A DNA stretch of 62,688 bases, the filler included, from Platydemus manokwari (lineage: Eukaryota): NCBI GenBank assembly GCA_037951405.1. It is 5 parts of 5 records of this genome, joined end to end, with 100 filler letters (N's around TTAATTAATTAA, not from the genome) between each part and the next. Parts side by side here need not be neighbours in the genome. Positions count along the whole stretch, not along the records: positions 31,646 to 41,183 come from JBBMOY011235431.1; 4 more parts are not named here. One strand, written 5' to 3'. Positions within the stretch are counted from its first letter, which is position 1, and every line of letters starts with the position of its first letter. Both the position numbers and the translations under genes were made by a program. Of this stretch, positions 31,646 to 41,183 are shown piece by piece. The notes under the pieces were generated by a model. That model saw only the letters and a program-made list of their open reading frames with translations, was not told where the DNA came from and made no database searches.

Positions 31646-31771
31646 GAAAGATGGGGAAATGTTGTAACTTCCGATGGACATTACTTTGGATAACAGAATT
31701 GTACAAGATTTTCTTTAATAAAAACTCAATTGTTCTAAAAAAATTCCGGTTTTTAAGTTATAGACCCAATA
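31646..31771 (+). mobile_element. 3' end of a mariner element (different family from 1-77 and 41284-41390)
   Basis: Encodes ERWGNVVTSDGHYFG*, the typical mariner C-terminus (RW--V---G-YF). Followed by TIR-like ...CCGGTTTTTAAGTTATAGACCCAATA. Confidence 0.8.
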
Positions 31772-31772
31772 T

Positions 31773-32314
31773 TATGACAGGGTGATAAATTTAATAAAAA
31801 TCTAAGATAAAGTAAAAGTTAATTAAAGTTTAAACAATGTAAAATTGAAAAAATACATAGGTAATACTATACAAATAAGATAAAAAACATAAGTGGACTT
31901 ATAATTGTTAGATTGTTAACTGACGCTAAATATTCAAAGTTACGATTTCTCTGATCACAGTTTGTATAGTTTAAATAAAATCGCTAATGTACAACACTCA
32001 GGATACAAAACTCAACGTCATTCAGAAAACAAAGATCCATAATGAGACCCGAATGATAAAACATTAATAGAAACTAGGGACAAAGAATGTTTGCAGCCAT
32101 CGAGACTCAACTTCTTTTATAGACTTGTCATGAGTTGAAATATTGTTTTACAGCTTTGTCTTTCATTCGTTAGGACCACCGGAGACTAAGTTATTGACAT
32201 ATTTATCTCTCTCTCGCTTGTCATTGACGTATCTCAATGCTAGCTGCTTGCTTTGGTGTGCACAGTGGCATATAAGACTAAAAAGATTTATAAAATGGTT
32301 ATAGCCTGTGCACA
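31773..32314. mobile_element. Possible solo LTR
   Basis: ~540-nt block bounded by imperfect inverted termini TATGACAGG...CCTGTGCACA. No second copy or clear TSD. Confidence 0.25.
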
Positions 32315-32859
32315 TATGAATATTTTTTTATCATGTTTTTATATTTTATTTCATTAAGTTTTGAATTTTTGAATTTTTATCTACTTTATTGTTTTTTCAT
32401 TTCTGTTTATTATACATGGGAAAATGTTCAATTGATATTATATGTGAGTATTATAATATGTGCAATTTATATATTGTGTTGCATCTCATTGTGAAGAAAA
32501 AAAGTTTAATTCAAAAGAAAAATACCATATGAAATATAAAAGGCTTGTTGAAATGCATGGGGATGAAATATCGAGAAAAAATAATTTTGTATATTTAGAT
32601 CTAATCTGAATCTGATTGTGCTTCATGTCTGTGTTGCCATCTGCCTTAAAACACTGAGTAGATTCTGAAAAATATTTACTTATCTTATATTTATTTAAGA
32701 GAATTACTAATTTAAAATAATATTTTTTCATCCGACACAATATTATTGTAATAGCTGCTACAAAGATACTCCACTTGTATAAAATTGTAAAGAACATGAA
32801 GCTATCTTAAAAGAAGTGTTTGAGTGCATTCACGCCACTGGATTGAATTAAATTTTTGA

Positions 32860-34820
32860 GTCATCTGATAAGCAAAGATGGAAAAAAAAAGTTATGCCTA
32901 TAAAAATTTTCAAATTAAAAATGCTCAAGAACCACAAGGCATATCAAAATTAGGATAATTTATAAGCCTCACAAATTACTACGGAAGATTCATCAAGGAC
33001 TATGCAAAGGTAGCACTACTTCTGTATGCAGAGATATTTGGAAATTATATAACTTTACAATGGATCGAAGAATGTCGAGAAAGATTTATGAAATTAGAAA
33101 TAGCCTTGTGTGAAGGCCCTATTCTGCATGACCCGCTAGAAAATAGAACATTTAATATGGATTCTGGCTCAAATTTTGGAGAAATAAGTGCAAAATTAAG
33201 TCATATAAGAGAAAATGGGTAGAAAGTAGTGACAGCTAATGAATTGCAGTTGTTGATGAGTCATGAAAATGAAAGAACCTTTGGCCTTTCACGAATTCGT
33301 TAAATATTTTAGACAATATCGGTGTGGGAAGAAATTTATTGTGCGCACAAATCATAAAGCCTTAGTATTTATTGTCTTTATTAACTCGAAGGGATTATCT
33401 TGAATTGGAGAAGATTGGTGTTTTCAATGCAAAAACAATAATGTGTTTGACAAAGCTAAGAAAACAAAATACTTTTAATCAAAATACTAGTATTGGAGTA
33501 CTATCAACCATACCTGATGTCGACCTGGCTGTTGATAATATCCTTACAAAAATATGATGATAGTGATATTATAAATGAAAATCAAAAATTGAAACTGAAA
33601 TTGCTGATTAAACAATAAAACAACTGAAAAGGATGATAATCCTTTAAAATGACTTATGCATCATAGAGATGCCACTAGTCGATTAATTAAATGGGTCAAG
33701 ACAATCCAATGATATGATATTTAAATCAGTTATAGATCTGAAAAATGTAATGCCAATGCGAGAATTAAAGAAGATGAAATTAACAACAGAAAAACCTTCT
33801 TTAAAATCTTACTTAAAACGATATCGAAATTAAACGAATCAGAACATTACTGGAAAAACGAGGGTACAACAGAACCCAAAACAAATAGTACAACTTGTAT
33901 ATTTTAATAAAGATATATTACAACGATAAAAATATAGTACTAGTGGTATCTGAGAAATATAAACATATCCTTTTCATGCAGTACCATGGCGGTGCATTAG
34001 AAGATCGTTTATCAACGAGAAAGATATTATTGAGACTGACATTGAGCTACAGTCGAACATGATGCTAGATATTAGTGCAAATCTTGTAAAATATGTATAA
34101 CCAGATGAAATACTAGAGCACGAATTAAAGAACCATTGATACCCATACCCATGGAAATGTCAGTCATGAAGTAGAAACTATAAAAGGCAATAAATATATC
34201 ATTGTATTTAGGGATTATTTGACAAAATAATCAGAGACCTTAGCAATTAATAATAAAAAAGCAGAAACAGTTGCATATGTGTTTATAGAAAAAATAGTTT
34301 TTAAGGATTCTTAAGAAATTACGAACTCTCTGTAATACCAATTTTCTTCATGAATAATTGAAAGCTATAATGGATCTGTTTGAGATCCTGAAATTAAACA
34401 CATCATCGTGTCAGCCGCAAACAAATGAAGTAATGGAGAGATTAATTGGCATTTTAATTAATATGTCATCATCGTATACTAGAAAAGCTCAAAGAGATTG
34501 GAATCTGTATACCAAGCCTTCTTTATGCGCATACAAAAACGCAGTGTATGAGGCAACAAGAGAAACACCATTTTATTTAATGTATTTAAGGATAAAGAAT
34601 ATACCTATAAATTTGAATTATCAGGAACTCAGTATATGGACATAGATGATTATAAATCATTATTTCAAGACAAATAATAGTCAATTTAGCCTCAGAAATA
34701 AAAATATCCAAAATAAAATATAAATGCGAGGAAAACAAGGTCGTTTGCGATCAGAAGGCATGTGAACATAAAATTAAAACAAGAGACTTAGTGTATATAT
34801 TTCGTCTCCAAAATACGTAA
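32860..34820 (+). mobile_element. Decayed Ty3/Gypsy pol fragment (RT C-terminus/connection, RNase H, integrase)
   Basis: TNYYGRFIKDYAKVA, W-EEC---F--L--ALC-GPIL, FIVRTNHKAL, GNKYIIVFRDYLTK, QPQTNEVMERL..RDWN..ATRETPFYLMY. Many stops and frameshifts. Confidence 0.85.
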
Positions 34821-36459
34821 ACTTACTAGACAAAGAAGACAACTTGAAAGATTAGACAATTACGACGAGCACTTAAAAATGTTGACCAACCTTACAATGA
34901 CCACAGTCCAAAGCGAAATGCTAGAAGAAGATCACAGCCCTCTAGCTTCGAAGCTGGACGAAATGGTACGCTGAATGGGCCCTAACAAATAAATTGGTTG
35001 ATCAGAGTTTGGGAGAAATTCTTAGCGTATTCCCCGATTGAAAATATGGATGAATACTCTCACTTAAAGAACAGACAATACCACTTCAATGCAAGATCAT
35101 CCTAATCAAATGTTGTAAAATCTGTGAACTGGAAGGATGATTATAGCAAACAAATTTCAAGCATACGGAAATCAAGCGATAACATCTACAACATGAATTC
35201 AAACAAGGAACCAAATTCAACTACACTTGACGAAGAAGATTTCAAAATGATAAGGAGGAAAACACGACGAAACCCATAGTTCAAATCAGAAAATCAAAAA
35301 ACGAATATAAACTTATCACGTATTGACTTTACAAGAAAAATGGAAGAAAAAAATGAAATTCATTCTAAGGAAAAACGGAGACCCCTTATTTCTGCTACTA
35401 TTAACACCGACAAGTCATGGTCTCTTAGCATTGACATCGAATCCCTAAAAGATGAACCGCATCTCAAAACAACTTTAGATAAATTCAGAAAAATCTTTGG
35501 AGAAAGGGAAAAGACAGCAGAATGAAGCTAACGAACATGAAAACAAATGTTAAGGTCCCATCTGTAACCCTAATAATATCCCAGCATTAAAGAATAAAGA
35601 CGCACCATTGCAATTCAAAAATAATCTTCGTAATTATGGAGGAGAAGATAAAGTTACTGATAAAATCATTGGAACACTGAAAGATATATTTCGGCTAACT
35701 AATACATTAAATAATGATAAAAGAAGTAACTTGGACTATCAAAACTCATACAATATAATTGAACTTGGCAATGGCACGGAAAACATAGGGAATCCTAAAG
35801 CCAAATAATTGAAAGAAGTTGATCTCGATATAGCAACCACAAATCACTTGAACCTGGATATCCTCAACACAAATGTAAGCAAGACTAGTATACAAGCTAA
35901 AGAGACGAACCTCAAAATGATTAGCTTAGCTACGCAAACAGAAGTGCTTACAATAGACCTGGAGAGTGACACGAACTCACATTTTACTGAAAAAAACCTT
36001 AAAGTGAATGCGGTAACATCTCCTTTATCGTCATTGAGAATTGATAATGCGATAGAATTGGATAAGTTCTACGGTCCTTCCACAGTCAAAAATAGGTCTG
36101 ATGTTCTCCAATTCATCAAAAGATTTGAATTAGAAAAAGAAAAAATGAAGGACAAGTTCATGGGAGAATATACCAAAAATAAACTCAAGAAATCTATGCA
36201 TCTCAAGAAGAAGCAGTGGACCCAGGGATTAAAGAAATCAAAATAAAAAAATTCACTACGAGTCAAGAAAAAATGCTGAACCTGAACAGGCCATAGCGTC
36301 GACTCCAACAAACATAAACAAGAATCGTTTCCTGTCAACCATCCCCAGCTTAAGGTTGTTAGATAATGAGGAGAACTCTTTGTCTAGTACTGCGAGCTAC
36401 ACAGAATCTGACTTTTAATGGGATCCCACTGGGTTAGGGCGAACAAAAGGACCTCAGTG

Positions 36460-36953
36460 TCGAATACCGAATGGTTCTCCGGAGACCAGATTGATAAAAA
36501 TGTATCAACACATGTTAAGTTAAATGATTGCATGTTCATTAGAAGCTATGTTGCAGAATTAATTACAAATGGAGCCAATCTCAGTGAAGTTAGTATCAAT
36601 CCCATGAAGCTCACATGTAAAACGGTCCTTGCTCCAATTAACATACGAAACCAACACTGGACGCTACTAGTGATATACCATTTGGGGGAGGTATACTTGA
36701 CGCATTGAGTAGTGATGAATTCTTAAATGAAGCTGAAATCAAAGCGAAGAGAATATGCAACACACTCAAATACGAAAACATACTTTGGAAAAACTCAAAG
36801 ATAAAAAGAAACTTCTTTGATAAGAAAGAACGACAATTACAAACAAATAACTTTGACTGCGGCTCATTAATATGCGGCTACATTGATTGCGTAGCCAATG
36901 ACCAATCATTCATAGACATAGACGTCAGAACCATCAGAAGAAAATGTAAATAA
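36460..36953 (+). pseudogene. Ulp1/SENP-like (peptidase C48) domain 1 of the retrotransposon, frameshifted
   Basis: WFSGDQID..PINIRNQHWTLLVI (His 36655), ILDAL (Asp 36699), QTNNFDCG (Cys 36858): the H-D-C triad plus the oxyanion Gln. Confidence 0.85.
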
Positions 36954-37019
36954 AATATTTCAGAAGATTCGATTAACCAATTAACAGGGTGGGATCTGCA
37001 ACTGCAGAAAATCAGGATG

Positions 37020-37480
37020 ACCATATCCTCTTTACAGAAAGACACATGATGGCCTTATGTAAAAAAGAATTTTATAGTCGAAAATTTCTAGTACCCGATC
37101 CTTTTATTGGTAGAGCCATCGGAATAAATGAGATTAAAGATATTTTGGAATTCCTGTCGTTCCAGTATTTCAAAAACAGAGAAATTATCTTATGTTCACT
37201 TCTGATGAATTCTAAACGCTGGATTCTAGTGATAATATTTGTAACAGAAAAATCAATTCAATTGCTGGACCTTAGAGGTGATGATACAGATGATGGAAAA
37301 CAAAATTACTCAGTAATCTAAATAGAAATATTTCCATAATGATATGGAACAGAGAAGGTCTGAAAGAAATTGAGCCTACAAAACTCAGACTCACACAGTG
37401 CAATTTTGGAGAAAGTGGGCCACTGGTATTTGGGTATATGTTGAACATCAGCCATAATTTCCAACTGATGAGAATAAATA
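37020..37480 (+). pseudogene. Ulp1/SENP-like domain 2 with substituted catalytic residues
   Basis: IILCSLLMNSKRWILVII..IQLLDLRG..QCNFGESGPLVFGYM aligns with the C48 pattern P---HW-L-V..YDS..Q-N--DCG-F. His is replaced by Arg (37217) and Cys by Ser (37414). Confidence 0.7.
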
Positions 37481-40329
37481 TAAAGACAATAAAGAAAAAA
37501 GCAAATAAAGCGGTCCTTGAGCATGAATGGAAGGTCAAGAAAGAGGAAAAACTATTGTGCATTCCTGATAATGGCCCAAAAGATACATTTGAATTCAGGA
37601 AATCATTAGCAAAAGGAGTGGCTAACAACTTTACATATGAAACAGTAGATGAAATGTTTAGCAAATACTGTGAATTTATTTGCTGTGTCTGCACAATTAA
37701 ATAATCAAGTAACACACACTTGGATAGAGCTAATGATGAAAAAAGAGGTGAAACTGACCTAAAACTAAGGAGACTGTTTAACCATCTGCTGCCTTTGAAT
37801 TAGCCACGCAATACACAAAAGTCGACTGTCGACATTTCGAAGAAAAACAGAAGCTAAAAGCAGATCTTCCTGATTGTGAAGGATTGTGTACGAAAGCATG
37901 TCAAAAATTTTGTTAACTAAAGAGAGTTACTAAAAGGGGCCAAAATTTTGACTTCAGCATAATAGAACCAGGAACAATTTATAAAACCCTTTGCGAAAAG
38001 GACCCAAGTGCTCCTGGAAAAAACAAGATCAATTATAAAGATATTCTATATGCAGACCCAGAGACAAAAATCATAGACAAGATTTTCACAAAATGTCTAC
38101 ATAACCAAGAAATACCAGTGGAATGGAAAACATATACATTGATGATACCGAAACCCATGAAAAAAGGTCATTATCATCAAGTCAACTCCTGGAGCCCTAT
38201 TGCTCTGCTCAGCTGCAGCTATAAAATTTTCACAACTATTCTGTACAAACAACTGAAAAATTGGATTGATGAAAACAACTTAATACATCCACTCCAGAAG
38301 AGCCTAGGTCCAAATGACGAATGTGCTGAGCGCAACTTTTTACTTCGAGCCATTATAGAAGAACACAGCAAGAAAAATATCGATAATGTTCACATCGGAT
38401 TCTCAGACATCGAAGAAGCCTTTCCTCCATTGGATCTTGAAGCGATGTTCACTATGTTCAAGAACTGTTCATCAACATTGGAACGCTGATGAATAAACTG
38501 GAAAAATGCATTTTATTACCATTGCAGAAATTAGGGGCCTTTGAGTTGTTCGTACCCATCAAAGTGATCTTCTACATGAGAAATTATTGTCACTTATAGT
38601 AGATTACTGCAGTTTGATGTGATGATAAGAAAATATCTGAAAAAAATCCTTAGCTTACCGAAATTTTGCTCATCAAATTACCTCAACTTAACAAAATCAA
38701 ACGGTAGTTGTGGACTACGAAGCATGACGGAGGAGTATACAATACAATCCATCACCCACGCGTATCATCTATTAACTAGCAAACATGAAATGATTAGGAT
38801 GACTGCCATACACTTCTTGTGCAAAATCACTGAATTGAATAACCAAGTTGCGACAATCGAAGAAGAATTAGGTTGGGTTAATTCACATATTCCATCAAAT
38901 GAAAGGAGCAAAACATGGTGGGGTAAAATAAGAGAGATTATTAAATATGCCGCAAAAAAACATATACCACGGTTTCTTTCACTATTATCAATTGTGAGAT
39001 AATGCTTAGAGTTCAACTTTAGCCTTACAATCAATGGTTCCCATCACGAAAGGAATGCCATAGTGGAACCAAAGAAAATCAAAGAAACGTCAAAACTGCT
39101 GAGACAATGTTTCAAATCAGAAATGAACGCTATAGCAGATACTCAGAAGCCATTAGTCCAATGAAGTCAAAAGTGGTTTTTAATGGGCACCTAACTATTG
39201 CTGAATTCAGATTTATTCATAATGCAAGGACGGACAACCTTCCCACTATGAATAAAAAGTACATGAGAGGAATGGCATACAGAAAATGTTTAAATGAAGT
39301 GGAATCGTAAACACACGTCTTCACCTGCTTCAACCATCCCACTCTTTTGTACTCTATAGACACGACAGAATCATGGACATACTGGACAAGGAAATTGTTT
39401 ACAATATGGATTACAGAGCCTTTGTAGGGAAAGAATGTCAATTTACAGAATCCAAATTAAGGGTAGATCTTCAACTAATAAATGATCGAAAATCCACGAT
39501 CGTCCTAGTCGATGTAAAATGCCCCATGGACGAACCTGATTTAATGGCCGAAACAGCCCAAAAGAATATAGAAAAATACACAGACCTCTGAAATGCGATA
39601 AAAAAAAGCGGCCGACTGGACTGTGGAACTGTTCACTTTTGTTGTAGAGTATCTCGGAACTTGGCAAACACAGACGAACGATTCAGTTCTAAAGAAATTA
39701 GGAATGACAACATTTCCAAGACAACATCGACTGGATGACGGAAACAGAATTGAATGAAATGTTGAATTGATTGTATGATTGAACTAGCGAACTGTGATTC
39801 ATGGATTGATCGAAAGAAAGAACCATATATATCCCATATTTTAATGTATGGGTTTCTCGAATATCAATGTTTATGAATAAATATTAATGTGTTTTTCGTG
39901 ATAAATTACAAACAACAGGTAATGTAAAGTTGTTGGGGGCTGGTACTTGATTCAAATTCTTTTGTTTATTATTTTTCACTTGCTTCATAATCTATTTTAA
40001 GATCGATTGTACAGTTGCAAAATGATTCCATCAAAATTAGAAATTGAATTAATTGAAGAATTAAAAACTTATTATTCATATACTAACCTCATTTGGGTAT
40101 ATAAAAGTAGCAATCCAGGAACTCTCCGAAATTGGCCCTTATACCAAGATATCTCTGAAGTATTTACACTAGTCTAGTTTAATAAAAATTAATTATTAAT
40201 GGCCTGATATCGAATAGTGATACACTTGGAAAACAGCATTTTGGATTAATCCCAATCGTGATTTTGGATGGCTCGATGAGGTTACCACTGTAGTGCAGGA
40301 ACTGCTGAAAGGAAAAATAATGGTACGTA

Positions 40330-41040
40330 ATGATTTACTAATCAAATTTAAATATTTAGCCAATTAATTGTAGTTCCAGGTTTCAGGAACCTCAAAATCC
40401 ATGCAAAGGCTATGAACAATACTAAAAATTATATTCGTAAGCAAAACAAATTGCCAAATTGCACAAGAAACTAATTCATTCCTTCTTAAAGGATGCCAAG
40501 CCATGAGATAAATATAAAAAAGTGGATCGATCACTATACACCACCACAAATACTAGGACAGCAAAAGAGAAAAATAACCTTAATGGATTATGATCAGAGA
40601 AAATTGAAAAGTGTGAACACCGAACAGACCGAATGCTCCAGAGAAATAGAAATCTTAATATAAAACGAGCATTTTAGTGGAAATAGCGTGGCAACTATGC
40701 ATAATGTCGACGACATTTGGAAGAAATAAATGACAGAGATGAAATATTCAAAATCAGTACAGAACAGGTAGTAGTAATTGCTAGCGAGATGATAACTAGA
40801 ACAATTGATCACTTGAAATGTTTCATATGACTAGAGACAGAGAACACTCAAAAAGAAACCCAAAAGTCAGTTGGAAAATCGAATATTTCAATTTTCTGAT
40901 TCTGGCAGTTTTCAAAATGTTTGAGACAGTCATTCCCTACGAGCAGACGGGAAACAAATGAGTGTCAGTGAAAATAATCAGAAAGATGAAGTGGACAAAA
41001 TAAAAAATAATGTGGAAGTATTCTACAAACTGCGGTGTAA
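40330..41040 (+). mobile_element. Very decayed LTR-retrotransposon integrase-like fragment
   Basis: Remnants LHKKLIH, TIDH and TVIPYEQTGN (cf. T-PYHPQ-NG) occur in the expected order. No ORF. Confidence 0.3.
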
Positions 41041-41110
41041 TGAGAAAAGAATAAAAAAATGATTCGAATTAATTGACATTTTTAATAATTATTTTGTTAA
41101 TTAATGAATA

Positions 41111-41112
<2 letters not shown>

Positions 41113-41183
<71 letters not shown>
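41113..41183. repeat. (TTA)n microsatellite at the contig end
   Basis: Direct reading. Confidence 0.95.

What the first reader, a model, noticed from the sequence alone, without database searches (positions are those of the whole stretch)
36418..37704. RLE retrotransposon carrying two tandem Ulp1/SUMO-protease-like domains, the second apparently catalytically dead
Seen: two consecutive C48-like folds upstream of the RT. Domain 1 keeps His-Asp-Cys (NQHW / LDAL / QTNNFDCG). Domain 2 has RW / LDL / QCNFGESG. Known: NeSL-clade elements such as C. elegans NeSL-1 carry a Ulp1-like protease ahead of the RT, and SUMOylation acts in piRNA-guided TE silencing in animals. Inference: an active deSUMOylase fused to a pseudo-protease (a possible SUMO-binding module) could be a TE counter-defence or polyprotein-processing device. 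Caveat: both substituted codons (CGC vs CAC, AGT vs TGT) are one change from catalytic, so the family may instead have two active proteases, which would also be notable.
Basis: partly seen in the sequence, partly recalled or inferred. Interest (0 to 1): 0.75.

Follow-up and report, generated by a model that had tools for sequence, protein, structure and literature searches.

The report
LINE with active-plus-dead Ulp1 protease pair
A broken copy of an R2-type jumping gene carries two Ulp1/SUMO-protease-like domains in a row, and the second has lost its catalytic histidine and cysteine in every related lineage found while staying conserved, so it is probably a retained non-cutting partner and not decay.

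Summary
On the + strand, 36418-37704 encodes two consecutive CE-clan (Ulp1/SENP, Pfam C48) domains upstream of an R2-like reverse transcriptase. Each domain is split by one frameshift. The copy is dead: stop codons, and an internal deletion of the RT core.

- **Domain 1** keeps His, Asp, Gln and Cys.
- **Domain 2** has Arg, Asp, Gln and Ser at those positions.
The losses are not decay of this copy. Seven database fragments, forming about three further lineages at 31-51% identity to the window's domain 2, show the same layout.
- **His position:** Lys in 6 of 6 fragments that cover it.
- **Cys position:** Ser in both fragments that clearly cover it, inside a conserved GES[GS]PLV[FY]GY motif.
- **Asp position:** one lineage has also turned it into Asn.
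- **Domain 2 is C48.** Pfam scores it above threshold in a relative. Language-model features, the ESM Atlas model and a weak Foldseek result agree.
- **Conservation:** domain 2 is more conserved than the linker behind it.

The most likely function is a non-catalytic ubiquitin-like-protein or substrate-binding partner of domain 1, resembling laboratory Ulp1 C580S substrate traps. This is inferred, not shown. NeSL-clade membership, host species and dN/dS could not be tested. No prior description of the tandem layout was found.

The parts
36418..36950 (+). C48/Ulp1-like domain 1. It has the canonical catalytic set and is split by one frame change near 36680-36700. N-half 36418-36705; C-half 36687-36950 in another frame.
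   Evidence: Pfam PF02902 hits of 15.6 and 14.2 bits, collinear. SENP1 alignment over the Cys helix, E 0.016. Codons.
36655..36657 (+). Domain 1 catalytic His codon (CAC) in NQHW. Asp is at 36699-36701, oxyanion Gln at 36840-36842, Cys (TGC) at 36858-36860.
36977..37500 (+). C48-derived domain 2, a pseudo-protease, split by one frame change near 37285-37300. N-half 36977-37318; C-half 37294-37500.
   Evidence: Atlas features 0.95 to Peptidase_C48. Homologues P0001-P0005 and P0007. Pfam C48 on domain 2 of relatives, with P0003 at 21.9 bits above the 20.7 cut-off. BLASTP to P0001: 4e-23 and 2e-20.
37217..37219 (+). Domain 2 Arg codon (CGC) at the catalytic-His column. Asp is at 37268-37270, Gln at 37396-37398, Ser (AGT) at the catalytic-Cys column 37414-37416.
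   Evidence: The His and Asp columns are fixed by the SENP2 and SENP5 alignments of P0001.
37501..37871 (+). Linker between domain 2 and the RT. It is poorly conserved and holds stops and frame changes in this copy.
   Evidence: Identity to relatives is 16-22%.
37872..37913 (+). Conserved CX3CX3CX3C cysteine motif just upstream of the RT.
   Evidence: The same spacing occurs in P0006 and P0007.
37917..38486 (+). RT N-terminal extension and first RT motifs, up to the motif with the first catalytic Asp.
   Evidence: Pfam RVT_1 24.2 bits. A profile that includes this piece hits solved R2 proteins 9nl3, 9dou and 9nl2, E 1e-12 to 6e-11. Identity to P0006 and P0007 is 54-58%.
38535..38639 (+). Remnant of the RT 'PLS' motif (38535-38564), followed almost directly by the post-RT thumb motif (38607-38639). 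The RT core with the YxDD box is missing, so this is an internal deletion.
   Evidence: Direct reading. The expected order of motifs comes from general knowledge of R2-type RTs.
38580..38999 (+). Thumb/linker region after the RT.
   Evidence: Open frame of 140 aa. No database hit. Assigned by position only.
39281..39384 (+). Decayed CCHC-type zinc-knuckle region ahead of the endonuclease, with a stop and a frame change inside.
   Evidence: Direct reading. Assignment rests on my knowledge of R2-type elements.
39457..39588 (+). Restriction-like endonuclease (PD-(D/E)xK type) motifs: RVD, VDVK and KNIEKY.
   Evidence: Direct reading. No Pfam or PDB sequence hit. Motif identity rests on my knowledge of R2 RLE alignments.
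39592..39754 (+). C-terminal tail of the ORF. The 3' end of the element is not defined and no poly(A) was seen.

Best explanation
The window holds a dead copy of a non-LTR retrotransposon of the R2 superfamily (RT followed by a zinc knuckle and a restriction-like endonuclease). It has frame changes and stops and lacks the RT core.

Ahead of the RT, its single ORF carries two tandem domains of the Ulp1/SENP (C48, CE-clan) fold:
- Domain 1 keeps the His-Asp-Cys triad and the oxyanion Gln, so it is presumably an active cysteine (iso)peptidase.
- Domain 2 is an old, conserved pseudo-protease. The His is replaced by Lys or Arg and the Cys by Ser in all lineages seen. One lineage also has Asp replaced by Asn.
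- In domain 2 the fold, the Trp next to the former His, the Gln (in 3 of 4 lineages) and an acidic residue in the N-terminal helix stay conserved.

Shown: the anatomy, the homology, and the family-wide loss of His and Cys.

Inferred: domain 2 no longer cuts. It acts as a binding module for a ubiquitin-like protein (most likely SUMO) or for the substrate peptide, working beside domain 1. It would be a natural counterpart of the laboratory Cys-to-Ser 'substrate trap' of Ulp1. The pair would serve either removal of SUMO from host or element proteins, or processing of the element's own polyprotein.
For: Anatomy.

Domain 1 is C48.

Domain 2 is C48:
- Pfam PF02902 on P0003, a single stretch inside domain 2, 21.9 bits against a cut-off of 20.7.
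- P0001 scores 35.6 bits, with its best stretch at residues 118-218 on profile positions 78-187.
- Weaker collinear hits occur on P0002, P0005 and P0007.
- Atlas features score 0.95.
- In the Atlas's own model of P0001, residues 49-238 match a SENP2-like cluster at TM 0.58, and all five listed rows contain C48.
- In Foldseek on my AF2 model, the top hits are almost all SENP, Ulp1, NEDP1 or XopD, best E 5.7e-4.
- The C-halves of domains 1 and 2 align at E 8e-6 and 3e-6.

Catalytic columns:
- SENP2 and SENP5 alignments place the Lys of P0001 on the catalytic His and its Asp on the catalytic Asp.
- His column: K in P0001-P0005 and P0007, R in the window.
- Cys column: S in the window, P0001 and P0007.
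- Asp column: D in four fragments and the window, N in P0002 and P0007.

The tandem layout is shared. P0001 and P0003 contain the end of domain 1, with an intact NN[HY]DCG motif, followed by domain 2. P0007 and P0006 run on into the same RT.

Conservation between lineages: domain 2 31-51%, linker 16-44%, RT N-terminus 54-67%.

The RT is R2-like.

Precedent for the mechanism: the Ulp1 catalytic domain with C580S binds SUMO and SUMO chains avidly (Kd 12.8 nM reported) and does not release them (PMC3216068). Solved SENP1 C603S and SENP2 C548S complexes with SUMO are listed.
Against: - No biochemical data exist. Binding of any ubiquitin-like protein by domain 2 is untested.
- The first of the two Trp residues that clamp the Gly-Gly tail in Ulp1/SENP (my knowledge) is Phe or Ile in domain 2. 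The His is replaced by a charged residue, so the groove may be altered.
- Only three sequences cover the Cys column (the window, P0001, P0007). A fourth, P0005, ends there with Thr.
- All relatives are short singleton ENA fragments of unknown organism. Their DNA could not be fetched, so no dN/dS was computed.
- Both AF2 models are of low confidence (pLDDT 43).
- The window copy of domain 2 itself gets no Pfam hit.
- The N-halves of domains 1 and 2 show no detectable similarity to each other. Origin by tandem duplication is therefore supported only by the C-halves.
Confidence: 0.6

Rival explanations
1. The pair serves only the element's own polyprotein processing. Domain 1 cuts the ORF product in cis, as was proposed for NeSL-1. 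Domain 2 is a non-catalytic helper that holds or presents the cleavage site or stabilises domain 1. There is no link to SUMO or host silencing.
For: - NeSL and Utopia-1_TSP carry one Ulp1-like protease ahead of the RT (PMC4640811).
- Linkers of relatives hold Gly-Gly-Asn or Val-Gly-Asn motifs, between the domains in P0003 and P0001 and after domain 2 in P0007. CE-clan proteases cut after Gly-Gly (general knowledge).
Against: The Gly-Gly motifs are not conserved across lineages: LGD in P0001 and P0006, none readable in the window. No cleavage has been shown for any LINE protease as far as I know. Nothing here distinguishes this reading from the SUMO reading.
Confidence: 0.3
2. Domain 2 is still a hydrolase that uses a changed mechanism. 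The Ser at the Cys column acts as nucleophile and the Lys at the His column as general base, a Ser-Lys dyad in a CE-clan fold.
For: Ser and Lys are the residues conserved at the two columns in the relatives. The Gln of the oxyanion hole is kept in 3 of 4 lineages. Ser-Lys dyad peptidases exist in other folds (general knowledge: signal peptidase, LexA, Lon).
Against: The window has Arg, a poor general base. One lineage has also lost the Asp and the Gln. No papain-like or CE-clan enzyme with a Ser-Lys dyad is known to me. Laboratory Cys-to-Ser SENP and Ulp1 are inactive traps.
Confidence: 0.06
3. Domain 2 is a functionless relic of a tandem duplication and is drifting neutrally.
For: It has lost its catalytic residues. 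The window copy gets no Pfam hit.
Against: It is retained at 31-51% identity across about four lineages whose linker regions have diverged to 16-44%. It has invariant positions, including the Trp after the former His, and a conserved GES[GS]PLV[FY]GY motif.
Confidence: 0.05
4. The tandem arrangement is an artefact of this decayed copy or of the assembly, for example a local duplication.
For: The copy is heavily damaged, and both frame changes sit at homopolymer runs.
Against: Independent database fragments P0001 and P0003 contain the end of domain 1 followed by domain 2 in one open frame. P0007 contains domain 2 followed by the RT. The two domains in the window are far too diverged to be a recent duplication.
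Confidence: 0.01

Closest known systems
[quoted passage not shown]
   Same: A single ORF with a Ulp1/C48-like domain ahead of the RT, and a zinc knuckle plus restriction-like endonuclease behind it.
   Different: Those elements are described with one protease domain. Here there are two in tandem, the second without His and Cys. The N-terminal zinc fingers typical of those elements were not seen; instead there is a CX3CX3CX3C motif before the RT. No spliced-leader, U2, rRNA or tRNA target was seen next to this copy.
R5/LIN lineage of platyhelminth RLE LINEs (Repbase LIN_SM families; PMC4640811)
   Same: RLE-type LINEs grouped in the NeSL clade.
   Different: Neither membership nor host was tested. 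I could not see their sequences or domain maps, so they may or may not have the same two-domain layout.
R2 elements (solved R2 proteins 9nl3, 9dou, 9nl2)
   Same: The RT N-terminal extension and first RT motifs align at E 1e-12. The overall order RT, zinc knuckle, RLE is the same.
   Different: R2 has zinc-finger and Myb DNA-binding domains at the N-terminus and no protease domain.
Laboratory substrate-trap mutants Ulp1 C580S, SENP1 C603S and SENP2 C548S
   Same: A C48 domain with Ser at the catalytic Cys that binds SUMO tightly without cutting (PMC3216068; PDB entries 2g4d and 5aek listed).
   Different: Those keep the catalytic His and both Gly-Gly-clamping Trp residues. Domain 2 has Lys or Arg for His and Phe or Ile for the first Trp. 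Binding by domain 2 is untested.
Active/inactive paralogue pairs among deubiquitinases, such as the MPN+/MPN- pairs Rpn11-Rpn8, CSN5-CSN6 and BRCC36-Abraxas (my own knowledge)
   Same: An active isopeptidase is paired with a catalytically dead paralogue that scaffolds or activates it.
   Different: Different fold (JAMM metalloprotease). The partners are separate polypeptides. They are cellular complexes and not transposon-encoded.
Ulp1 domains captured by DNA transposons (plant MULEs, CACTA, hAT; Ginger elements; PMC2836005, PMC8978399, Atlas rows)
   Same: A transposable element carries a C48 domain of unknown role.
   Different: These are DNA transposons, mostly of plants. I know of no report there of an active-plus-dead tandem.

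Membership tests
Peptidase C48 / CE clan (Ulp1, SENP) | Domain 1 matches the family profile | tested here: inconclusive
   The two frame-separated halves score 15.6 and 14.2 bits. Each is below the 20.7 cut-off, but they are collinear on profile positions 82-102 and 161-190. The C-half aligns to SENP1 at E 0.016. The N-half gets no PDB hit.
Peptidase C48 / CE clan (Ulp1, SENP) | Domain 1 has the catalytic His, Asp, Cys and oxyanion Gln | tested here: met
   H 36655, D 36699, Q 36840 and C 36858. The Cys motif is also intact in P0001 and P0003.
Peptidase C48 / CE clan (Ulp1, SENP) | Domain 2 matches the family profile | tested here: met
   The window copy gets no hit. Its homologues do: P0003 21.9 bits from a single stretch in domain 2 (cut-off 20.7), and P0001 35.6 bits with the best stretch in domain 2. 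P0002, P0005 and P0007 give weaker collinear hits.
Peptidase C48 / CE clan (Ulp1, SENP) | Domain 2 adopts the CE-clan fold | tested here: inconclusive
   In the Atlas model of P0001 (pLDDT 0.56), residues 49-238 match a SENP2-like cluster at TM 0.58. Foldseek on my AF2 model (pLDDT 43) gives almost only CE-clan hits, but E is only 5.7e-4 and TM is at most 0.45.
Peptidase C48 / CE clan (Ulp1, SENP) | Domain 2 has the catalytic His and Cys | tested here: not met
   Arg (window) or Lys (6 relatives) at the His column. Ser at the Cys column in the window, P0001 and P0007. Domain 2 is therefore a homologue of the family but not a canonical enzyme of it.
Peptidase C48 / CE clan (Ulp1, SENP) | Isopeptidase or endopeptidase activity on SUMO, NEDD8 or ubiquitin | not testable with these tools
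   Needs a biochemical assay.
RLE-type (R2-superfamily) non-LTR retrotransposon | RT related to R2-type RTs | tested here: met
   The only PDB hits of the profile are R2 proteins, E 1.4e-12 to 6e-11. Pfam RVT_1 scores 24.2 bits, below the 29.6 cut-off, because only the first motifs survive.
RLE-type (R2-superfamily) non-LTR retrotransposon | C-terminal CCHC knuckle and PD-(D/E)xK restriction-like endonuclease | tested here: inconclusive
   The motifs RVD, VDVK and KNIEKY, and a decayed Cys/His region, can be read in the expected order. No profile or PDB sequence hit supports them.
NeSL clade (NeSL, Utopia, R5/LIN) | RT groups with the clade in a phylogeny | not testable with these tools
NeSL clade (NeSL, Utopia, R5/LIN) | Ulp1-like protease domain ahead of the RT (present in NeSL and Utopia-1_TSP, not in all members) | tested here: met
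   The literature basis is PMC4640811.
NeSL clade (NeSL, Utopia, R5/LIN) | Site-specific insertion into a multicopy RNA gene or repeat | tested here: inconclusive
   The piece has no Rfam family (E up to 1) and no tRNA. The ends of the element are not defined, and the upstream flank is a Ty3/gypsy remnant.

The most novel reading that the evidence does not exclude
A lineage of RLE LINEs encodes a two-part device against SUMO-dependent silencing. A live deSUMOylase is fused to a natural Cys-to-Ser 'SUMO trap' that recruits the enzyme to SUMOylated chromatin or silencing factors, or sequesters them. This would be a transposon-encoded counter-defence against SUMO-dependent heterochromatin formation.
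Probability: 0.2. Interest if true: 0.8.

Novelty: new variant of a known kind. Interest (0 to 1): 0.5.

Why it matters
Ulp1-like proteases in LINEs have been known since NeSL-1, but their role has never been settled.

An old, conserved pairing of an intact and a dead C48 domain argues that the protease module is under selection for something more elaborate than a single self-cleavage. It also supplies a natural experiment: the dead copy carries the same Cys-to-Ser change that turns Ulp1 into a nanomolar SUMO binder in the laboratory.

If domain 2 binds SUMO, this would be a transposon-borne reader/eraser pair for a modification that animals use to silence transposons. It would also be a rare natural pseudo-enzyme in the CE clan.

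If it only assists self-processing, it is a modest addition to LINE domain diversity.

Tried and rejected

Blank or uninformative searches:
- Word-index protein search with the domain 2 N-half found nothing. Its length limit makes that uninformative.
- PDB sequence search with the window's domain 2 N-half gave only a chance RelA hit. The RLE piece and thumb piece gave nothing meaningful. The domain 1 N-half gave nothing.
- The PDB profile search with A6 found only R2 RT hits and no SENP at E up to 1.
- An HMM of domain 2 against all six-frame pieces of the window found no significant match to domain 1. Its C-half columns were dropped for lack of depth, so the test is weak.
- BLASTP of the two N-halves found no alignment.
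Two scans of JGI metagenome contigs, with domain 2 patterns and with RT patterns, found no relatives.
- Rfam and tRNA scans of the piece found nothing, so no target gene was identified.

Low-confidence models:
- Two AlphaFold2 runs on shallow alignments gave pLDDT 43. Only the first was used, and only as weak support.

Literature:
- Searches found no description of a tandem or dead C48 domain in a LINE.
- Malik and Eickbush 2000 is not held.

Not done:
- No complex-prediction job was sent. No intact domain 1 and no eukaryotic SUMO reference were available.
All comparisons used the pieces as they stand.

Full report
**What is in the window**

The piece 31646-41183 is AT-rich, 28-39% G+C. On its + strand it holds the remains of two retroelements.

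- From about 32919 to about 34980 there are fragments of a Ty3/gypsy-type pol. One fragment gives a weak RT_RNaseH_2 hit, and integrase-like segments can be read.
- From roughly 36400 to 39754 lies a non-LTR element, readable only by hopping between the three forward frames.

The order of parts in the non-LTR element is:

| Part | Coordinates |
|---|---|
| C48-like domain 1 | 36418-36950 |
| C48-like domain 2 | 36977-37500 |
| Poorly conserved linker | 37501-37871 |
| Small CX3CX3CX3C motif | 37872-37913 |
| N-terminal part of an RT | 37917-38486 |
| Remnant of the RT 'PLS' motif | 38535-38564 |
| Post-RT thumb motif, following almost at once | 38607-38639 |
| Decayed Cys/His knuckle | 39281-39384 |
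| Restriction-like endonuclease motifs (RVD, VDVK, KNIEKY) | 39457-39588 |
| Short C-terminal tail | to 39754 |

The RT core with the YxDD box is absent. Together with several stops and frame changes, this makes the copy non-functional.

**Checking the observation**

- Domain 1: His CAC 36655, Asp 36699, Gln 36840, Cys TGC 36858.
- Domain 2: Arg CGC 37217, Asp 37268, Gln 37396, Ser AGT 37414.

Each domain is interrupted by one frame change, near 36680-36700 in domain 1 and near 37285-37300 in domain 2. Both sit at short homopolymer runs, so an assembly error cannot be excluded for these two breaks.

The resemblance is not chance:

- The halves of domain 1 hit Pfam Peptidase_C48 collinearly, at 15.6 and 14.2 bits.
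- Its Cys helix aligns with that of SENP1.
- The C-half of domain 2 aligns with the C-half of domain 1 at E 8e-6.
- The N-half of domain 2 gets Peptidase_C48 clusters as 27 of its 30 nearest feature neighbours, top score 0.95 with 182 shared features.

**Relatives**

An exhaustive HMMER scan of 1.84 billion representative proteins with the domain 2 N-half found five homologues, P0001-P0005, E 1.5e-14 to 3.3e-4, at 34-40% identity. Word-index searches added P0006 and P0007.

All seven are singleton ENA fragments without names. Their organisms are unknown. They fall into about three lineages besides the window's:

- P0001, with P0006.
- P0003, P0004 and P0005.
- P0002 and P0007.

Alignment A6 is collinear with the window pieces from domain 2 through the linker and the cysteine motif into the RT. 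P0001 and P0003 start inside domain 1, with intact NNHDCG and NNYDCG motifs, and continue into domain 2 in one open frame. P0007 and P0006 run from domain 2 or the linker into the RT. The tandem layout ahead of the RT is therefore a family trait and not an accident of this copy.

**Is domain 2 a C48 domain?**

Yes, by several partly independent lines.

- Pfam scores P0003 at 21.9 bits from a single stretch that lies wholly in domain 2, above the curated 20.7.
- Pfam scores P0001 at 35.6 bits, with its best stretch (residues 118-218) on profile positions 78-187.
- P0002, P0005 and P0007 give weaker hits in the same register.
- phmmer aligns domain 2 of P0001 to SENP2 and SENP5 over the His and Asp strands.
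- The ESM Atlas holds P0001 letter for letter. Its model, over residues 49-238, matches a SENP2-like cluster at TM 0.58 by target. All five family sets listed contain C48.
- My own AlphaFold2 model is poor, pLDDT 43. Foldseek nevertheless returns almost only SENP, Ulp1, NEDP1, XopD and NopD, best E 5.7e-4. I count this as weak support only.

**Is domain 2 dead, and is that a property of the family?**

| Column | Window | Relatives |
|---|---|---|
| Catalytic His | Arg | Lys in all six that cover it |
| Catalytic Cys | Ser | Ser in P0001 and P0007, within the shared motif GES[GS]PLV[FY]GY; P0005 ends exactly there with Thr |
| Asp | Asp | Asp in four fragments, Asn in P0002 and P0007 |
| Oxyanion Gln | Gln | Kept in P0001 and P0005, Asn in P0007 |

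The alignment to SENP2 and SENP5 fixes the His column.

Lys and Ser at these columns in lineages only 31-51% identical to the window make a recent loss in this copy very unlikely.

Conservation supports retention under constraint:

- Domain 2 is 31-51% identical between lineages.
- The linker is 16-44% identical.
- The RT N-terminus is 54-67% identical.
- The Trp after the former His is invariant.

No dN/dS could be computed because the DNA of the relatives could not be fetched.

**How it most likely works**

Shown: a LINE family carries an intact-looking C48 domain followed by a conserved C48 homologue that lacks the nucleophile and the general base.

Inferred: domain 2 does not cut and has been kept as a binding or scaffolding module.

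The closest mechanistic precedent is the laboratory Cys-to-Ser form of the Ulp1 catalytic domain. It binds SUMO and SUMO chains tightly, with a reported Kd of 12.8 nM, and traps SUMOylated substrates (PMC3216068). SENP1 C603S and SENP2 C548S have been crystallised with SUMO (entries listed).

Domain 2 also keeps an acidic residue (Asp or Glu) in the N-terminal helix motif. By my recollection of the Ulp1 sequence, this corresponds to Asp451, the residue that PMC3216068 shows is needed for SUMO binding. That correspondence is my reading and not a tool result.

Against a simple trap:

- The first of the two Gly-Gly-clamping Trp residues is Phe or Ile in domain 2.
- A charged residue replaces the His.

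What the pair is for remains open. I put about 0.35 on a role with a ubiquitin-like protein such as SUMO, about 0.3 on pure self-processing of the ORF product, about 0.06 on a Ser-Lys hydrolase, and small odds on neutral decay or artefact.

**Comparison with what is known**

RLE LINEs with one Ulp1-like protease ahead of the RT are known: NeSL in nematodes and Utopia-1_TSP (PMC4640811). The same paper places platyhelminth R5/LIN families in the NeSL clade.

The RT here is R2-like by tool evidence. This copy is not next to any recognisable RNA gene.

I found no description of a tandem or catalytically dead C48 domain in a LINE in the held literature. Repbase could not be consulted.

I therefore rate it a new variant of a known kind.

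**Limits**

- The evidence for the Ser column rests on three sequences.
- All relatives are anonymous fragments.
- The structure models are weak.
- No function was tested.
The pieces were searched apart.

Noticed in passing
window 32919-34980 (+): Decayed Ty3/gypsy-type pol directly upstream of the LINE. It includes an RT-RNase H connection (weak Pfam RT_RNaseH_2 hit, 18.8 bits) and integrase-like segments, with many stops. It is unclear whether the LINE inserted into it or beside it.
   Followed up: partly
window 37872-37913 (+); also P0006 and P0007: A CX3CX3CX3C cysteine motif is conserved just upstream of the RT in all three lineages that cover it. It sits where R2 elements carry zinc-finger/Myb DNA-binding domains, so it may be a small metal-binding or DNA-binding knuckle.
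   Followed up: no
window 38565-38606 (+): The RT 'PLS' motif remnant is followed within about 15 codons by the post-RT thumb motif. Roughly 150-200 codons, including the YxDD catalytic box, are missing from this copy.
   Followed up: partly
P0003 residues about 100-105; P0007 residues about 222-228; P0001 residues about 60-65: Gly-Gly-Asn or Val-Gly-Asn motifs occur in the linker between the two C48 domains (P0003, P0001) and in the linker after domain 2 (P0007). They could be cleavage sites for a Gly-Gly-directed protease. They are not conserved in all lineages.
   Followed up: no
window 36680-36700 and 37285-37300 (+): Both frame changes inside the protease domains fall at short homopolymer runs (G-rich and A-rich). 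They could be assembly errors and not mutations.
   Followed up: no
window 35280-36415 (+): Long low-complexity, Lys/Asn/Glu-rich open segments (81, 84, 145 and 61 aa) lie upstream of domain 1. They have no family hit and may be the N-terminal part of the ORF or a 5' region. The 5' end of the element is undefined.
   Followed up: partly
window 41109-41183: A (TAT)n microsatellite of about 25 copies lies at the right edge of the piece.
   Followed up: no
P0004 (126 aa): This relative passes from the domain 2 N-half almost directly into the post-domain linker (KPVNSLLVR...). It lacks the C-half with the GES motif, so it is a deleted or rearranged copy.
   Followed up: no
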